Virus record (IMG/VR): IMGVR_UViG_3300028275_000006
Coordinates: 148,543 to 212,542 of that record
Reading direction: 5' to 3' (one strand)
Length of the DNA stretch: 64,000 nucleotides
The translations under genes and the position numbers were made by a program. The notes beneath the pieces are model-generated. The model did no database searches and was not told the origin of the DNA. It worked only from the letters and a program-made list of their open reading frames with translations. Positions 13,736 through 20,685 of this stretch are shown here, piece after piece (within the stretch, counting starts at the first letter, position 1; each line of letters begins with the position of its first letter).

Positions 13736-13811
13736 TGGTGCCCCTTGTCCGACTCGAACAGACCACCTACTGATTACAAATCAGTTGCTCTACCAGATGA
13801 GCTAAAGGGGC
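13736..13811 (-). tRNA. trnT: tRNA-Thr(UGU), CCA encoded
   Basis: GCCCCTT acceptor/AAGGGGC-ACCA; D arm AGCTCATCTGGTAGAGC; anticodon stem ACTGA-TTTGTAA-TCAGT; T loop TTCGAGT. Confidence 0.95.
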
Positions 13812-16343: not shown

Positions 16344-17024
16344 TTAGCGAATTTCTGGGAACAAACATTCCTGTATGAATACCCTAACATCCTCTTCATC
16401 TAAGCCTAAACTAGCCATTACACGTGGAGTATGTGGGTTACATTTTTGATTGATTGCGTAGTAGTTCTGCGCTTCTGTGGTATTTTCAGTAGTATTATTA
16501 GTTTCTGCTACAGTTTCTAAGTAATGTGCCAGTGTATCTTTAGCCATTTCTATAATCTGCGCTAGTTCTTCTTCGCTCTGCACATTACCTGCGGCTACCA
16601 TGCTAGGGCTGAATATGTTGGTAGCCCATTCTGGTAGTTGGCGTTCTCTGCGCCATTCGAGTCGTTTAACATAATCAGCAAACCATTCCATCATAGGATG
16701 ATTAGAATCTCCTGCTTTGCTGTAATCATGAAAACAGCCAGTAATCTTATTCTTGCCTGCTACAACGTCAAAGCCGTAAATTGGTGCTGGATTGTGTAAG
16801 TGTGGGAAGATGCAACAATGCATCATCCAGAGTCCTTTGGTTTCTCTAGCATCCACAACATCAACGTGAGCACGGCGATAAGACCCACTGGTCCAAACAC
16901 GATTAACCCAACCAGGCTGATTAAAGCGATCCATGCCCGGTTCAAAGATTTCTGTTCCTGTTTCATTAAAACTGCTTTCTAAAAGATGCTGAACTTCAAT
17001 CAGCGTGTCCCATACTTTACTCAT
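16344..17024 (-). CDS. pcyX: ferredoxin-dependent bilin reductase (PcyX/PcyA-like)
   Basis: RRAHVDVVD, LWMMHCCIFP, PIYGFDVVAG, FHDYS, LPEWATNIFS, NPHTPRVM; adjacent to heme oxygenase. Confidence 0.85.
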   Translation of the reverse strand: MSKVWDTLIEVQHLLESSFNETGTEIFEPGMDRFNQPGWVNRVWTSGSYRRAHVDVVDARETKGLWMMHCCIFPHLHNPAPIYGFDVVAGKNKITGCFHDYSKAGDSNHPMMEWFADYVKRLEWRRERQLPEWATNIFSPSMVAAGNVQSEEELAQIIEMAKDTLAHYLETVAETNNTTENTTEAQNYYAINQKCNPHTPRVMASLGLDEEDVRVFIQECLFPEIR

Positions 17025-17571
17025 AGTGTGGAACTATATCCATCATTTGATCAAAGAATTTTGCCGCAAAATCAAAACATACTCTTGCTTCATCTGCTAG
17101 ACTATCATCTAGTTTTGCACGAATTGCTTCTTTGATCTTTTCAGGTTCGTCTCCAAACTGATAGTATTTGCCACTGCCTGGAACTCTTTTAGCAATCATT
17201 TGACCGCCTGATAAATCTCCCATGTGACGTACATAAATGTGTGCCATCAACTTTTTAGGATCATCTTTGATGCTGAGAATATATTTGATATATTCATCCA
17301 CTACCGGACACATTTTTGGTTCTTCAGGATTGTCTGAGCCCCATAGTTCTATGAAGTCAGATAAAATTGCAGGTGCTCTGCGTATCTCTGGTAGACCGGA
17401 AAGTAATCCATGTGGCATAGCACAGACTTCTAAAATCTCATACATTGGATGTTGATTTTTTAGATATGTTGCGTATAGTTTAGGATTTACATTTCCTGAA
17501 AATAAGACTTTAACAAAAGGCCTTGTTTCTGCTCTGCGATGTTGCTCGTGTGTAAGTTCTTTTAGACTCAT
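17017..17571 (-). CDS. hemO: heme oxygenase
   Basis: LKELTHEQHRRAE proximal His; AHIYVRHMGDLSGGQMI distal helix. Confidence 0.92.
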   Translation of the reverse strand: MSLKELTHEQHRRAETRPFVKVLFSGNVNPKLYATYLKNQHPMYEILEVCAMPHGLLSGLPEIRRAPAILSDFIELWGSDNPEEPKMCPVVDEYIKYILSIKDDPKKLMAHIYVRHMGDLSGGQMIAKRVPGSGKYYQFGDEPEKIKEAIRAKLDDSLADEARVCFDFAAKFFDQMMDIVPHYE

Positions 17572-17876
17572 TCGGAATCCACTTTAATTTGTAATGGGAA
17601 GCCTGCTTGACGTGCAAGGTGTGTTGCCTCAACACCTTTCTGCTCGGCGATCTCGTAGGTATAAACACCTACTACTGCTGAACCTTCATTGTGTACAGTT
17701 AATGTAATCTGTTCAGCATTTTCTCTGGAGTGCTTAAACACAGTCATTAGTAATTCAATAACAAAGTCGATTGGAGTTTTGTTATCATTTAAAAACAATA
17801 CCTTGTAACGCTTAGGTTCAGTGATATCGATTTTAATCTTTTCGTCAATTTTAATTTCGGTGTCTACAGTTGGCAT
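17568..17876 (-). CDS. clpS: ClpS N-degron adaptor
   Basis: YKVLFLNDNKTPIDFVIELL, VHNEGSAVVGVYTYEIAE, FPLQ. Confidence 0.92.
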   Translation of the reverse strand: MPTVDTEIKIDEKIKIDITEPKRYKVLFLNDNKTPIDFVIELLMTVFKHSRENAEQITLTVHNEGSAVVGVYTYEIAEQKGVEATHLARQAGFPLQIKVDSE

Positions 17877-17898
17877 ATTGGCCCTCCATTCTTAATGG

Positions 17899-17925
17899 TA
17901 TTTATTAGTGGGGGCCGGAGCCCCC
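17899..17925 (-). promoter_or_regulatory. GC hairpin followed by late promoter TAAATA upstream of clpS
   Basis: GGGGGC-TCCG-GCCCCC then ACTAATAAATA. Confidence 0.55.
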
Positions 17926-17931
17926 GATTTT

Positions 17932-18378
17932 TTACTTAACTTCTTTCACTTCAATCTTACGTGGCAGAAGTGCTTCAGGAACAATGCGCTCGATTTGAAT
18001 TGTAAGCACACCATCCTTAATTTCTGCTGACTTGATTTCCATGTGTTCTGCTAGAGTAAATCTACGTTCGAAATCACGGAAAGCAAGACCTCTGTGTAAG
18101 TACTCAACTTGGTATTCGCCTTCGTTAGCATTGATTGCCTTCTCGCCGCGAATAGTTAATTGATCACCTTCCACTTCTACTGCAACTTCATCTTTACCGA
18201 ATCCTGCTACAGCAACAACTATATTATACTGGTTTTCTCCAGACTTTTCAATATTATATGGAGGATAGTTGTTCGAAATCTGATGTGCAAAGCGTGTTTC
18301 GAAAGTATCGAATAGATTGTCGAAACCGATTAATGCTCTGTTTAGAGCGGCTGTGTCAAAACGTGTTAATTGTGTCAT
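17932..18378 (-). CDS. small heat shock protein Hsp20 (IbpA-like)
   Basis: NYPPYNIEK, AVAGF, YLHRGLAFRDFERRFTLA, DGVLTI. Confidence 0.93.
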   Translation of the reverse strand: MTQLTRFDTAALNRALIGFDNLFDTFETRFAHQISNNYPPYNIEKSGENQYNIVVAVAGFGKDEVAVEVEGDQLTIRGEKAINANEGEYQVEYLHRGLAFRDFERRFTLAEHMEIKSAEIKDGVLTIQIERIVPEALLPRKIEVKEVK

Positions 18379-18435
18379 TTTATATCTCCTTTAATTAAGC
18401 AAGAATTTTAGTAGGGCCCCACCCGGGCACCCTAC
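18376..18435 (-). promoter_or_regulatory. ROSE-like RNA thermometer in the hsp20 5' UTR
   Basis: UCUUGCU-UAAUUAA-AGGAGA pairing SD with a bulged G; upstream GUAGGG/CCCUAC hairpin. Confidence 0.7.
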
Positions 18436-18444
18436 ATAACGAGT

Positions 18445-20310
18445 TTAGTTTGTTTCCTTAAACTCGGCATTGATTGCATCTTCCTGAACAGGTTCAAATG
18501 GCTTGTCCTGTTTGGCCTGTGCAATCGCTTGACTGGCCACTGCTAGTTCGCTAGTCTTTTGTACGATAGCGTCTTTGTCAGAACCTGTCAATTCTGTTTG
18601 AAGTGCTTTAACAGCATCTTCGATCTTTGTTTTATCTGTGTCTGAAAGTGTTGTTTCTTTCATGTCGTTTTCAACATTGTTGATCAACGCCTCGGCTGTG
18701 TTCCTAGCATCGATAAGTTCACGTGCCTTCTTATCTGATTCGGCATTAACTTCTGCATCACGAACCATTTGTTCGATCTGCTCTTTGCTTAGACCACTGT
18801 CACTCTTAATTGTGATTTGATTTTCTTTGCCGGTGTTTTTATCTTTAGCACTAATTTTCATAATGCCGTTAGCATCGATGTCAAATGTAACTTCAATCTG
18901 TGGAGTGCCACGACGTGCTGGAGCAATACCGTCTAACTTAAACTCACCCAGGAGTTTGTTGTATTGGAATAGTTCACGCTCGCCTTGTGCTACTTTGATA
19001 TCAACTGCTGGTTGATTATCTTCTGCTGTGCTAAACACTTGGCTAGCCTTAGTAGGTATAGTTGTGTTCTTTTGTACAAGTTTAGTAAACACACCTCCCA
19101 TAGTTTCAATGCCTAGTGACAATGGTGTTACGTCTAACAATAGAACGTCTGTACGATCACCTGCTAGTACTGAACCTTGAATAGCCGCACCAACTGCTAC
19201 TGCTTCGTCTGGGTTAACGTCTTTGCGTGGAGCCTTACCGAATAGTTTTTCAACTGCTTCTTGTACCTTGGGCATACGTGTTTGCCCACCAACAAGAATA
19301 ACTTCGTCAATTTCTGATGGAGTAACACCTGCATCCTTCATAGCAACCTTACATGGTTCGATACTACGTTGGATTAGTTCTTCTACCAATGCTTCTAACT
19401 TAGCACGAGTAATCTTAACATTCATGTGCTTAGGACCACTTGCGTCTGCTGTGATGTAAGGTAAGTTAACATCAGTGCTGGCACTGCTAGATAACTCAAT
19501 CTTGGCTTTTTCAGCGGCTTCTTTTAGACGTTGTAAGGCCAACATGTCTTTCTTAAGGTTCATGCCTGACTCTTTCTTAAACTCGTCGACCAAGTAGTCC
19601 ATAATACGTTGGTCAAAGTCTTCACCACCTAAGAATGTGTCGCCGTTAGTGCTTAGTACTTCGATTTGTTTTTCGCCATCCACGTTGGCAATTTCAATGA
19701 TCGATACATCGAAAGTACCACCACCAAGGTCATAAACAGCAACTTTGCGATCTGCTTTGTCGTTTTTATCAACACCATAAGCAAGAGCTGCCGCAGTAGG
19801 CTCGTTAATAATACGCAATACTTCCAAGCCTGCGATTTTTCCAGCATCCTTAGTTGCCTGTCTTTGGCTGTCATTAAAGTATGCGGGAACTGTGATAACT
19901 GCTTGAGTAACTTTTTCACCTAAATAATCCTCTGCTGTCTTTTTCATCTTACGCAGAACTTCAGCACTAATCTGCGGAGGTGCTAATTCTTTACCCTGTG
20001 CGCGAACCCATGCATCTCCATTCTTGGATTCCATGATTTCGTAAGGCATTAGGTCAATATCTTTTTGTACAGCCTGTTCTTTGAACTTACGTCCAATAAG
20101 ACGCTTGGCCGCATAGATTGTGTTTTTGGGATTTGTTACTGCTTGACGTTTAGCACTAGCACCTACAAGTACTTCGTCTGTAGAATAGGCAACAATACTA
20201 GGTGTAGTTCTTGCACCTTCGCTGTTTTCAATAACTTTGGAATTTCCTGACTCGATGACTGCTACGCATGAATTGGTAGTACCCAAGTCGATACCGATGA
20301 CTTTGCTCAT
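18445..20310 (-). CDS. dnaK: Hsp70 chaperone DnaK
   Basis: [47 protein letters not shown]. Confidence 0.98.
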
Positions 20311-20400
20311 AACATTTCTCCTTATAATTAAGCAAGATTTTAATTGTGGGCAACTGCCCGTTTCGTAAAACCCTATTGGCGTTCTACAAAATTATTTATA
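20308..20400 (-). promoter_or_regulatory. late promoter TATAAATA plus multi-hairpin ROSE-like leader of dnaK
   Basis: TATAAATA at 20393-20400; stems GUAGAAC/GUUUUAC and GGGC/GCCC; final UCUUGCU-UAAUUAUA-AGGAGA. Confidence 0.68.
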
Positions 20401-20685
20401 TCAGATTTTATCTAAATTTGGTATTTTAGACCATTTTTTTAACTTTTCGACTTTTGCCCTTTTTGCTTCGTGCAATTTGCCCCAACTGACTACTTCGTTG
20501 ATCATTAGTATATCAATCATAGCCAGCATATCCCCTAGTTCTTCTTCTAGGTGCTGTCGATTGGTCTGCTCTGTTCCGTGTTTAGCATTGTCTATGCCAA
20601 AACGCCTAATTTTACTTACTGCTTGAATAACTTCTGCACACTCTTCCTGCAGAATGTCCATAACTTCGTTATTTTGTTCGTCCAT
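20401..20685 (-). CDS. MazG-like NTP pyrophosphohydrolase
   Basis: ILQEECAEVIQA...LEEELGDMLAMI acidic helices. Confidence 0.8.
   Translation of the reverse strand: MDEQNNEVMDILQEECAEVIQAVSKIRRFGIDNAKHGTEQTNRQHLEEELGDMLAMIDILMINEVVSWGKLHEAKRAKVEKLKKWSKIPNLDKI

What the first reader, a model, noticed from the sequence alone, without database searches (positions are those of the whole stretch)
18376..20400. ROSE-like RNA thermometers in front of both phage hsp20 and phage dnaK
Seen: both leaders end AAAAU(U)CUUGCU-UAAUUA(U)A-AGGAGA (18385-18404; 20317-20337). UCUUGCU pairs with AGGAGA leaving a bulged G, and each has extra upstream hairpins; the dnaK leader starts at a perfect TATAAATA. Known: the U(U/C)GCU motif with a bulged G opposite the SD defines ROSE thermometers, found almost only before small heat-shock genes. 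Inferred: a phage uses temperature-gated translation for a two-gene chaperone set, with ROSE extended to dnaK and driven by a late rather than sigma32 promoter.
Basis: partly seen in the sequence, partly recalled or inferred. Interest (0 to 1): 0.8.

Follow-up and report, generated by a model that had tools for sequence, protein, structure and literature searches.

The report
ROSE-like leaders on phage chaperone genes
Two neighbouring chaperone genes (dnaK and hsp20) of an uncultured river phage each carry a folded RNA leader of the ROSE "RNA thermometer" type, and hundreds of aquatic phages, cultured cyanophages and SAR11 bacteria place the same leader before these genes, which suggests, untested, that these phages make their own chaperones mainly when it gets warm.

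Summary
Both leaders, on the minus strand, share AAAAU(U)CUUGCUUAAUUA(U)AAGGAGA. In this sequence UCUU[G]CUU pairs imperfectly with the Shine-Dalgarno (SD) sequence AAGGAGA. Each leader also has a 5' hairpin with a bulged G, and the dnaK leader has a third hairpin.

A covariance model built from relatives hits the 64-kb window only at these two sites (52 and 27.8 bits). In phage loci fetched by protein similarity alone, 79 of 79 dnaK and 77 of 78 hsp20 leaders carry the motif. All 122 exact occurrences of the 18-mer read from IMG/VR precede one of these two genes.

Hairpin 1 covaries strongly. The SD hairpin is invariant and never loses its bulge. The same leader precedes hsp20 in SAR11 and SAR86, a dnaK-dnaJ operon in an alphaproteobacterial assembly, and hsp20 in cultured cyanophages and a pelagiphage.

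It resembles Rfam ROSE_3 in both hairpins but scores below that family's threshold. Energy models do not single out the SD hairpin, and temperature gating is inferred by homology only.

Verdict: new, phage-borne members of the known short ROSE-like thermometer class. They sit behind a NATAAATA late-type box instead of a sigma-32 promoter.

The parts
20393..20400 (-). TATAAATA box (NATAAATA class), putative late-type promoter of the dnaK-hsp20 unit
   Evidence: Lies directly after the mazG stop and 5 nt before hairpin 1. A NATAAATA box ends 5 nt before hairpin 1 in 23 of 48 unique dnaK leaders of relatives. ATAAATA on the coding strand is intergenic in 10 of 12 copies. The transcription start was not mapped.
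20365..20387 (-). dnaK leader hairpin 1: 7 bp, bulged G20380, 2 bp, loop AAUA
   Evidence: Model R1 alignment and minimum-free-energy fold. 8 of 9 pairs show compensatory changes across relatives.
20348..20359 (-). dnaK leader extra hairpin GGGC-AGUU-GCCC, a clade-specific insertion that makes a three-hairpin leader
   Evidence: Appears as a 22-nt insertion relative to model R1. It is folded in every prediction. It is present, with different sequences, in related dnaK leaders.
20317..20337 (-). dnaK SD hairpin: UCUU[G20333]CUUA (20329-20337), loop AUUA (20325-20328), UAAGGAGA (20317-20324)
   Evidence: Energy is -2.8 kcal/mol at 37 C and -6.4 at 15 C.
20303..20309 (-). UGAGCAA (the UG of the start codon plus codons 2-3), a perfect 7-bp complement of the anti-SD UUGCUUA and a possible alternative partner
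   Evidence: This is the minimum-free-energy structure once 15 coding nucleotides are included. It lies about 3 kcal/mol below the ROSE-like conformer at 5-45 C. Complementarity of 7 bp or more occurs in 64 of 116 unique dnaK leaders.
18445..20310 (-). dnaK (621 aa)
   Evidence: Pfam HSP70 855 bits. At least 587 IMG/VR stretches encode relatives.
18411..18435 (-). hsp20 leader hairpin 1: 7 bp, bulged G18428, 3 bp, loop GGGU
   Evidence: Model R1 scores 52 bits. Folds. Covariation.
18385..18404 (-). hsp20 SD hairpin: UCUU[G18400]CUU (18397-18404), loop AAUUA (18392-18396), AAGGAGA (18385-18391)
   Evidence: The predicted probability that the SD is unpaired rises from 0.07 at 10 C to 0.30 at 45 C. 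With the bulge deleted in silico it stays at 0.01-0.03.
17932..18378 (-). hsp20 (148 aa)
   Evidence: Pfam HSP20 and phrog_432.
20401..20685 (-). mazG-like gene upstream; its stop codon abuts the TATAAATA box
   Evidence: The consensus ...aatctga.ATaAATA of relatives shows conserved gene order. RNA-library contigs bridge mazG and dnaK.

Best explanation
The two leaders are phage copies of the short ROSE-like RNA thermometer.

Transcription probably starts just after the NATAAATA box at 20393-20400 and yields a dnaK-hsp20 message, possibly longer. This step is inferred. Each coding region is preceded by a stable 5' hairpin with a bulged G. By analogy with Pseudomonas ibpA, this hairpin would act as a folding and stability module. 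A weak 3' hairpin follows, in which UCUU[G]CUU pairs with the SD AAGGAGA through a U.G wobble and a bulged G.

At low water temperature the SD (and, in dnaK, possibly also the start codon through an alternative pairing of the same anti-SD) is masked and little chaperone is made. Warming melts the imperfect helix like a zipper and lets 30S ribosomal subunits bind. The phage's own DnaK and Hsp20 would then be translated in proportion to temperature, without needing host sigma-32.

Shown here: the sequences, the predicted folds, the conservation, the covariation of hairpin 1, the exclusivity to these two genes, and the similarity to ROSE_3 and to host hsp20 leaders.

Inferred: the transcription start, the repression and the temperature response.
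For: - Motif and folds.
- Model R1 hits the window only at the two leaders.
- In loci fetched by protein similarity alone, 79 of 79 dnaK and 77 of 78 hsp20 leaders carry the anti-SD/SD motif.
- All 122 exact 18-mer sites read from IMG/VR precede DnaK or Hsp20 homologues: 77 and 43, plus 2 cut by contig ends. These Hsp20s are as little as 32% identical to the window's.
- All model hits in about 1.05 Mb of phage DNA lie before these genes, with one exception.
- Hairpin 1: 97% of cells are paired against 82% in shuffles, 8 of 9 pairs show double changes, and the covariation score is 0.45 and 0.41 against 0.16 and 0.14 shuffled and at most 0.14 in slid controls. RNAalifold on an unfitted MAFFT alignment finds the same hairpin with the same bulge.
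- Anti-SD: among 344 unique leaders the bulged purine is never lost (G 297, A 47). The only other changes keep pairing (U.G to C-G), and a perfect complement never appears.
- Both hairpins align to Rfam ROSE_3, including the GAUGCC...GGGUC bulge motif (29.2 bits, E 2e-4 for a relative; 19.6 bits for the window's dnaK leader).
- The same leader precedes hsp20 in about 60 SAR11 and SAR86 genomes behind (A)CCATAT, a sigma-32-type -10 box.
- Experimentally validated two-hairpin ROSE-like thermometers of Pseudomonas ibpA have the same plan and a 61-62 nt leader.
- Deleting the bulge in silico closes the SD. The same deletion abolishes expression in tested ROSE-like elements.
Against: - No experiment was done.
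- Nearest-neighbour energies do not single out the SD hairpin. It gives -1.6 and -2.8 kcal/mol at 37 C, with z-scores of -0.2 and -1.5 against shuffles.
- The cost of opening SD to AUG (3.0-7.7 kcal/mol) is within or below the range of 10 other strong-SD genes of the window.
- For dnaK the model prefers a non-ROSE conformer in which the anti-SD pairs with the start-codon region and the SD is mostly open (probability unpaired about 0.75).
- No Rfam ROSE model reaches its gathering score, and the hsp20 leader gets no ROSE hit at all.
- Helix 2 offers no compensatory changes, because one strand is the SD itself.
- Contigs from RNA libraries run through the promoter box.
Confidence: 0.65

Rival explanations
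1. The leader is a constitutive expression module. Hairpin 1 only protects the 5' end of the mRNA and the SD is strong. The anti-SD pairing is too weak to gate translation at environmental temperatures. The element is conserved because it came along with captured host heat-shock genes.
For: Hairpin 2 is no more stable than shuffled sequences. The cost of opening the ribosome-binding region is within the range of other genes. A stabilising role for hairpin I is proposed for Pseudomonas ibpA. RNA-library contigs show the block 16.4-20.1 kb at higher word depth than the upstream genes, with no temperature information.
Against: It does not explain why UCUU[G/A]CUU is almost invariant at a fixed distance from the SD in 344 unique leaders of two unrelated genes. 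It does not explain why the destabilising bulge and U.G wobble are always kept, or why the 18-mer stays identical before Hsp20s that are only 32-48% identical in protein. Validated short ROSE-like hairpins are similarly weak in energy models (my reading of that work).
Confidence: 0.2
2. The two bulged-purine helices are binding sites for a trans-acting factor, either a phage or host protein or a small RNA. That factor, not temperature as such, would set translation of the chaperones.
For: Both helices share the local motif 5'-U[G]C over 5'-GG. The apical part of hairpin 1 (Y-G-CC...GG-R) is conserved in sequence while the lower stem covaries freely. The bulge identity tends to switch from G to A in both hairpins and both leaders together (G/G 218, A/A 43, A/G 20, G/A 1).
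Against: The element works in very different cellular backgrounds (SAR11, SAR86, cyanophage hosts, freshwater hosts), so a factor would have to be universal. On a DnaK tree the joint switching rests on only 3-4 independent pairs and is not significant (sign test P 0.125-0.5). The same hairpin-1 motif is part of the ROSE_3 consensus, for which no factor is known.
Confidence: 0.1
3. For dnaK specifically, the working switch is not the ROSE helix. It is the pairing of the anti-SD UUGCUUA with UGAGCAA (the start codon and codons 2-3), which masks the AUG rather than the SD.
For: This conformer is about 3 kcal/mol more stable than the ROSE-like one at 5-45 C. Complementarity of 7 bp or more is found in 64 of 116 unique dnaK leaders.
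Against: dnaK leaders that begin AUGUCUAAG keep the ROSE helix but have only 4-5 bp to the coding region. The ROSE helix forms first during transcription and is the minimum-free-energy fold of the leader up to the AUG. AGC AAA may simply be the inherited codons for Ser-Lys.
Confidence: 0.15
4. The similarity of the two leaders is a chance resemblance of two AT-rich ribosome-binding regions.
For: Loose matches to the 12-mer occur at chance frequency in the window.
Against: The exact 12-mer occurs only at these two sites. Model E-values are 1.8e-13 and 3.3e-6. The element is conserved across hundreds of contigs.
Confidence: 0.01

Closest known systems
Short ROSE-like RNA thermometers of Pseudomonas ibpA (Krajewski et al. 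2013, PMC3669281)
   Same: Two hairpins in a leader of about 60 nt. Hairpin I sits at the very 5' end. The SD lies in hairpin II, imperfectly paired to U(U/C)GCU. The AUG is unpaired. The gene controlled is a small heat-shock gene.
   Different: The element here is phage-borne. It sits behind a NATAAATA box instead of a sigma-32 promoter (NNCTTGAA-N13-18-CNCCATAT). Hairpin II is shorter (7-8 pairs including a U.G wobble, AU-rich). The element also precedes dnaK, where a third hairpin is inserted. It is untested.
Rfam ROSE_3 (RF02523)
   Same: Both hairpins align: GAUGCC-loop-GGGUC with a bulged G in hairpin 1, and ACUYGCU...AGGAG in hairpin 2.
   Different: Scores are 19.6 bits (window dnaK leader), no hit (window hsp20 leader) and 21.6-29.2 bits (relatives), against a gathering score of 43. 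The phage hairpin 2 lacks the GA/UC extension of the consensus.
hsp20 leaders of SAR11 (Pelagibacteraceae) and SAR86, and a dnaK-dnaJ leader of an alphaproteobacterial assembly (found here; not annotated by Rfam)
   Same: They carry the identical 18-mer CUUGCUUAAUUA(N)AAGGAG and the same bulged hairpin 1. Model R1 scores 41-59 bits.
   Different: The cellular copies stand behind (A)CCATAT, a sigma-32-type -10 box. The phage copies stand behind NATAAATA, or behind a fused CCCCATATAAATA in some marine contigs.
RNA thermometers so far reported in phage genomes: lambda cIII, SPbeta blyA, and a sigma-70 gene of a gut Caudoviricetes (PMC11182007)
   Same: They are cis-acting, temperature-sensitive structures in phage mRNA leaders.
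   Different: As that paper describes them, blyA and the sigma-70 leader are of the fourU kind. Lambda cIII is, from my own knowledge, a two-conformer switch. None is ROSE-like, none controls a chaperone gene, and each is confined to one phage or a few.
Anabaena 'avalong' ROSE-like thermometer (Cimdins et al. 2014, PMC4152365)
   Same: A ROSE-like anti-SD whose bulged residue is not G (it is U there, A in 47 of 344 phage leaders). Deleting the bulge shuts expression off.
   Different: It has a long first hairpin with an alternative anti-SD in its loop, and it is cyanobacterial rather than viral.

Membership tests
ROSE-like RNA thermometer (class as defined in the literature) | Lies in the 5' untranslated leader of a heat-shock gene | tested here: met
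   The leaders lie directly before hsp20 (Pfam HSP20) and dnaK (Pfam HSP70).
ROSE-like RNA thermometer (class as defined in the literature) | [quoted passage not shown] | tested here: met
   Two hairpins for hsp20 and three for dnaK in the predicted folds. Hairpin 1 is supported by covariation. The hairpin that holds the SD is predicted only.
ROSE-like RNA thermometer (class as defined in the literature) | Conserved U(U/C)GCU anti-SD imperfectly paired with the SD | tested here: met
   UUGCU is present in both leaders. Among 344 unique leaders of relatives the core reads UUGCU, UCGCU, UUACU or UCACU. Cyanophage isolates have CUCGCU.
ROSE-like RNA thermometer (class as defined in the literature) | Predicted bulged G opposite the SD | tested here: met
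   G20333 and G18400 are bulged in all folds. The bulge is never lost in 344 unique leaders (G 297, A 47).
ROSE-like RNA thermometer (class as defined in the literature) | Translation is repressed at low temperature and released at high temperature by melting of the SD hairpin | not testable with these tools
   Only energy models were available. The hsp20 SD opens gradually (0.07 to 0.30 between 10 and 45 C). The hairpins are not exceptional against shuffles or against other genes.
ROSE-like RNA thermometer (class as defined in the literature) | Usual (not defining) context: a sigma-32-dependent promoter | tested here: not met
   The window has TATAAATA before dnaK and no box before hsp20. The SAR11 and SAR86 copies do have CCATAT.
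Rfam RF02523 ROSE_3 | Covariance-model score at or above the curated gathering score (43 bits) | tested here: not met
   No match at gathering score. The dnaK leader scores 19.6 bits. The hsp20 leader has no hit at E up to 10 in a 131-nt search. The best relative scores 29.2 bits.
Other Rfam ROSE models | Any match to the covariance model | tested here: not met
   No other ROSE family appears at E up to 10.
fourU RNA thermometer | A run of four U pairing with the SD | tested here: not met
   The anti-SD is UCUUGCUU, with no UUUU opposite AGGA.
T4-type late promoter | A TATAAATA / NATAAATA box a few nucleotides before the transcript start, enriched before late genes | tested here: inconclusive
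   The box is at 20393-20400. Exact TATAAATA is not enriched in the window (3 found, 6.3 expected). ATAAATA on the coding strand is intergenic in 10 of 12 copies (P 7e-10) and lies before tail and virion genes. The start site was not mapped, and a gp55-type late sigma factor was not looked for.

The most novel reading that the evidence does not exclude
The element is more than a host thermometer carried along with a captured gene. It would be a phage-adapted, low-temperature-tuned sensor, rewired from sigma-32 to the late promoter, that couples chaperone supply during virion assembly to water temperature across cyanophages, pelagiphages and large freshwater phages. It would work as a two-module device: hairpin 1 and the SD hairpin share the same U[G]C/GG bulge module, switch it from G to A together, and therefore either melt cooperatively or are read by one common partner.
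Probability: 0.15. Interest if true: 0.75.

Novelty: new member of a known kind. Interest (0 to 1): 0.6.

Why it matters
hsp20 is one of the most widespread auxiliary genes of marine T4-like cyanophages. 508 GenBank phage records encode a homologue. Hundreds of uncultured aquatic phage contigs also encode a DnaK.

If their leaders are working thermometers, temperature would directly set how much chaperone a phage makes during infection. That would give a simple, testable molecular link between water temperature and phage productivity.

A 2024 paper counts only three RNA thermometers in phage genomes, none of them ROSE-like. This finding would add a whole, very large family. It would also extend ROSE control from small heat-shock genes to dnaK.

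The element is easy to test, because cultured cyanophages and a pelagiphage carry it. It also corrects gene starts: the annotated hsp20 of P-HM2 reads through the element.

Tried and rejected
- Rfam at gathering scores found only a tRNA in the window. Permissive searches gave sub-threshold ROSE_3 hits, plus weak hits to freshwater-2 and DUF2815 RNA that rest on the SD-AUG tail only.
- DNA search of GenBank phages with the region found no close relative, only distant dnaK matches of 64-70% identity, several of them to records that look like host DNA. A protein search found no phage DnaK above 70% identity.
- Thermodynamics as a discriminator failed. Opening energies and z-scores of the SD hairpins are ordinary. 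My first evaluation of the ROSE-like conformer used a structure string shifted by one position and was redone.
- MAFFT alone could not align the SD hairpin because loop lengths vary. I therefore built a gapless 14-sequence seed and a covariance model. Counts on alignments fitted to that model lean towards the structure, so serves as the unfitted control.
- Exact TATAAATA is not enriched in the window. The relaxed ATAAATA box is.
- River metatranscriptomes hold the locus, but only as assembled contigs. These carry no strand or 5' end information and may include DNA, so they neither map the transcription start nor prove transcription.
- The joint G-to-A switching of the two bulges was tested on a DnaK tree. 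There were too few independent pairs for significance.
- Literature searches found no report of ROSE-like elements in phages, before phage hsp20 or dnaK, or in SAR11. The library lacks most subscription journals, so absence is not proof.
Full report
**What is in the window**

The region lies in a block of genes that all sit on the minus strand. In order they are a mazG-like gene (20401-20685), dnaK (18445-20310, 621 aa, Pfam HSP70 855 bits), hsp20 (17932-18378, Pfam HSP20), clpS, a heme oxygenase and a ferredoxin-dependent bilin reductase.

The rest of the window encodes ribonucleotide reductase, tail-fibre and tail-spike-like proteins, virion proteins, an endolysin-like protein and one tRNA. 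The same sequence is part of a 212-kb IMG/VR contig and occurs in riverine metagenomes. It is therefore a large uncultured freshwater phage. No GenBank phage is close at the DNA level.

**Check of the observation**

Read on the minus strand, both leaders contain AAAAU(U)CUUGCUUAAUUA(U)AAGGAGA just before the AUG. The exact 12-mer CTTGCTTAATTA occurs nowhere else in the 64 kb.

The predicted fold of the hsp20 leader has two parts:
- a strong hairpin at 18411-18435 with bulged G18428;
- a weak hairpin at 18385-18404 in which UCUU[G18400]CUU pairs with AAGGAGA.

The dnaK leader has the same first hairpin (20365-20387, bulged G20380), an extra hairpin (20348-20359) and the SD hairpin (20317-20337, bulged G20333). 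TATAAATA lies at 20393-20400, between the mazG stop codon and hairpin 1.

**Comparative evidence**

In the loci returned, all 122 sites lie 5-9 nt before an ORF. Of those ORFs, 77 are DnaK homologues, 43 are Hsp20 homologues (as little as 32% identical to the window's), and 2 are cut off by contig ends but begin like DnaK.

That scan selects for the motif, so I also fetched loci by protein similarity alone. Among these, 77 of 78 hsp20 leaders and 79 of 79 dnaK leaders have an anti-SD/SD pair of the form YU(U/C)(G/A)CU(U/A)-loop-AAGGAG.

I built a covariance model (R1) from 14 gaplessly alignable leaders, none from this phage.
- Scored at every position of the window, it finds only the two leaders: 52 bits (E 1.8e-13) and 27.8 bits (E 3.3e-6, with the extra hairpin as a 22-nt insertion). 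The next hit has E 1.1.
- In 630 kb and 426 kb of related phage loci, its 93 and 133 hits all end just before hsp20 or dnaK. The single exception is described below.
- Of 72 dnaK-centred loci with hits, 53 carry the element before both genes.

The dnaK-hsp20 pair with one leader each is thus a conserved phage module.

**Structure support**

For hairpin 1:
- 8 of 9 pairs show changes on both sides.
- 97% of cells are paired, against 82% after shuffling.
- The covariation score is 0.45 and 0.41, against 0.16 and 0.14 shuffled and at most 0.14 when partners are slid.

Those alignments were fitted to the model. As a control, RNAalifold on a plain MAFFT alignment of 26 leaders predicts the same hairpin, with the same unpaired column and 8 of 10 pairs compensated.

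The SD hairpin cannot covary, because one strand is the SD. It is 100% paired, four or five of its six pairs are invariant, and the rest change only between U.G and C-G. What argues for function is the way it is conserved. In 344 unique leaders the anti-SD is CUUgCUU in 277, the bulged purine is never lost (G 297, A 47), and a perfect complement of the SD never appears. Selection appears to keep the helix imperfect, which is the hallmark of a zipper-type thermometer.

**Relation to known families**

The literature defines ROSE-like thermometers as follows:
- two to four hairpins;
- the SD in the last hairpin, imperfectly paired with U(U/C)GCU;
- a predicted bulged G.

All of these features are met. 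The validated ibpA thermometers of Pseudomonas are the closest match. They have two hairpins in a 61-62 nt leader, hairpin I at the 5' end, and an unpaired AUG.

Rfam's ROSE_3 model aligns to both hairpins. Its consensus hairpin 1, GAUGCC-loop-GGGUC with a bulged G, is the same motif as in the phage leaders. The scores nevertheless stay below the gathering score of 43:
- 19.6 bits for the window's dnaK leader;
- no hit for its hsp20 leader;
- 21.6-29.2 bits for relatives.

I therefore file the element under the literature class "ROSE-like" and not as a member of RF02523 as currently modelled.

**Cells and cultured phages**

The same 18-mer scan of one genome per species returned 83 stretches, of which the 80 made available were read:
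- 61 of these precede hsp20 homologues, almost all in Pelagibacteraceae (SAR11) plus SAR86. They have the same bulged hairpin 1 and an upstream (A)CCATAT box that fits the sigma-32 -10 consensus CNCCATAT.
- 3 precede dnaK. One of these is a canonical dnaK-dnaJ operon on a 934-kb alphaproteobacterial contig (R1 45.5 bits).

ROSE before dnaK therefore also exists in cells.

Among GenBank phages, 508 records encode an Hsp20 homologue, mostly cyanomyoviruses. All six records I fetched carry the element before hsp20:

| Phage | R1 score (bits) |
|---|---|
| S-RSM4 | 35.6 |
| P-SSM2 | 30.9 |
| S-RIM2 | 19.7 |
| P-HM2 | 17.5 |
| Pelagibacter phage HTVC115P | 15.4 |
| S-PRM1 | 10.1 (weak) |

In these phages the anti-SD reads ACUCGCU. 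No cultured phage has a close DnaK.

I found no paper that reports any of this. A 2024 paper counts three thermometers in phages, none of them ROSE-like.

**Promoter**

Exact TATAAATA is not enriched in the window (3 found, 6.3 expected). The relaxed box ATAAATA on the coding strand is intergenic in 10 of 12 copies, although only 8.2% of the window is intergenic (P 7e-10). It precedes tail-spike-like, virion, endolysin-like and clpS genes as well as dnaK.

In relatives a NATAAATA box (GATAAATA 20, TATAAATA 14, CATAAATA 8) ends 5 nt before hairpin 1 in 23 of 48 unique dnaK leaders. This fits a T4-type late promoter whose transcript begins at hairpin 1. From memory, NATAAATA is also the late-promoter consensus described for cyanomyoviruses.

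The hsp20 leader of this phage has no such box in its 66-nt spacer. Other phages do have one there.

Contigs from four river metatranscriptomes cover dnaK-hsp20-clpS-heme oxygenase as single pieces and bridge the mazG-dnaK junction. Word depth is higher over 16.4-20.1 kb than further upstream. This is compatible with co-transcription and with read-through from mazG. Contigs carry no 5' ends and may include DNA, so the transcription start remains open. They do show that the whole leader, including UUGCU, is present in what was sequenced from RNA libraries.

**Energetics, stated plainly**

The SD hairpins are weak: -1.6 kcal/mol (hsp20) and -2.8 kcal/mol (dnaK) at 37 C, and -4.7 and -6.4 at 15 C. 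They are not more stable than shuffled sequences (z -0.2 and -1.5).

The cost of opening SD to AUG is within or below that of 10 other strong-SD genes of the window.

The hsp20 SD is predicted to open gradually (unpaired probability 0.07 at 10 C, 0.30 at 45 C). Deleting the bulged G in silico closes it (0.01-0.03). This matches experiments on ROSE-like elements, where bulge deletion shuts expression off.

For dnaK, once 15 coding nucleotides are included, the model prefers a different structure. The anti-SD UUGCUUA pairs perfectly with UGAGCAA (the start codon and codons 2-3). This lies about 3 kcal/mol below the ROSE-like conformer at all temperatures. That complementarity occurs in 64 of 116 unique dnaK leaders, but not in those beginning AUGUCUAAG. 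Either conformer hides part of the ribosome-binding site, so the logic is unchanged, but the geometry for dnaK is uncertain.

Energy models neither prove nor refute thermosensing here.

**Mechanism and rivals**

My best explanation is a ROSE-like zipper thermometer before each gene, transcribed from a late-type promoter. Translation of the phage's own DnaK and Hsp20 would then rise with temperature independently of host sigma-32.

| Explanation | Confidence |
|---|---|
| ROSE-like thermometer before each gene (homology to ROSE-like leaders alone: about 0.9) | 0.65 |
| Constitutive stabiliser-plus-SD leader | 0.2 |
| Binding site for a trans-acting factor that reads the two similar bulged helices | 0.1 |
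| For dnaK, a start-codon-masking conformer | 0.15 |
| Chance resemblance | 0.01 |

The factor idea draws on the joint G-to-A change of the bulges in both hairpins and both leaders (G/G 218, A/A 43, A/G 20, G/A 1). On a tree of 72 DnaK proteins the states changed at least 5 and 10 times and always in the same direction when both changed. With only 3-4 independent pairs this is not significant.

**Novelty and verdict**

The kind of element is known. The members are new: phage-borne, extremely widespread in aquatic phages, attached to dnaK as well as hsp20, and moved from a sigma-32 promoter to a late-type one.

This would interest specialists in RNA thermometers and in marine phage ecology. It is easy to test in cultured cyanophages. 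Temperature gating itself has not been demonstrated.

Noticed in passing
L028:1800-2000: In one viral contig a ROSE-like element (R1 29 bits) stands behind TGTATAAATA. It is followed by an 8-codon ORF (MIKTILSS) and then, about 80 nt later, by a sigma-70-like TTGACA-N17-TATACT and groES-groEL. It is either an orphaned leader or an upstream-ORF arrangement on a phage chaperonin operon.
   Followed up: partly
L046, L049, L068-L076 (about 60 nt before hsp20): These marine contigs have CCCCATATAAATA or CCCCATATATATAATA before hairpin 1. This is a perfect sigma-32-type -10 box (CNCCATAT) fused to the NATAAATA box, as if the gene could be read by both host heat-shock and phage late transcription.
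   Followed up: no
alignments A3 and A4; unique leaders of L001-L279: The bulged purine of hairpin 1 and that of the anti-SD tend to be the same letter (G/G 218, A/A 43, A/G 20, G/A 1). In some contigs all four bulges of the two leaders are A. A test on a DnaK tree had too few independent pairs.
   Followed up: partly
L364:493-570 (Prochlorococcus phage P-HM2, PHM2_147): The annotated hsp20 start lies 24 codons upstream and reads through the ROSE-like element. The in-frame ATG at L364:565, 7 nt after UAGGAGAA, is the likely start.
   Followed up: partly
window 16344-20685 (-): The gene block mazG - dnaK - hsp20 - clpS - heme oxygenase - ferredoxin-dependent bilin reductase combines chaperone, protease-adaptor and pigment-pathway genes in a freshwater phage. 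In RNA-library contigs it has higher word depth than the genes upstream.
   Followed up: no
window 17899-17926: A G+C-rich hairpin (17909-17926) lies between hsp20 and clpS. On the coding strand it is followed by AATAAATA (17899-17906), 23 nt before clpS. This may be a terminator or processing site plus a promoter of clpS's own.
   Followed up: no
window, minus strand: 54127, 43383, 36938, 34956, 26647, 22722, 20399, 17905: ATAAATA boxes lie 6-84 nt before gene starts, including tail-spike-like, virion and endolysin-like genes. 10 of 12 copies fall in the 8.2% of the window that is intergenic.
   Followed up: partly
L283:4230-7825 (-): An alphaproteobacterial assembly (934-kb contig) has the full two-hairpin leader before a canonical dnaK-dnaJ operon (R1 45.5 bits). 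This would be a cellular ROSE-like element on dnaK.
   Followed up: partly
window 13736-13811 (-): A single tRNA-Thr (anticodon UGU) lies in the phage window.
   Followed up: no
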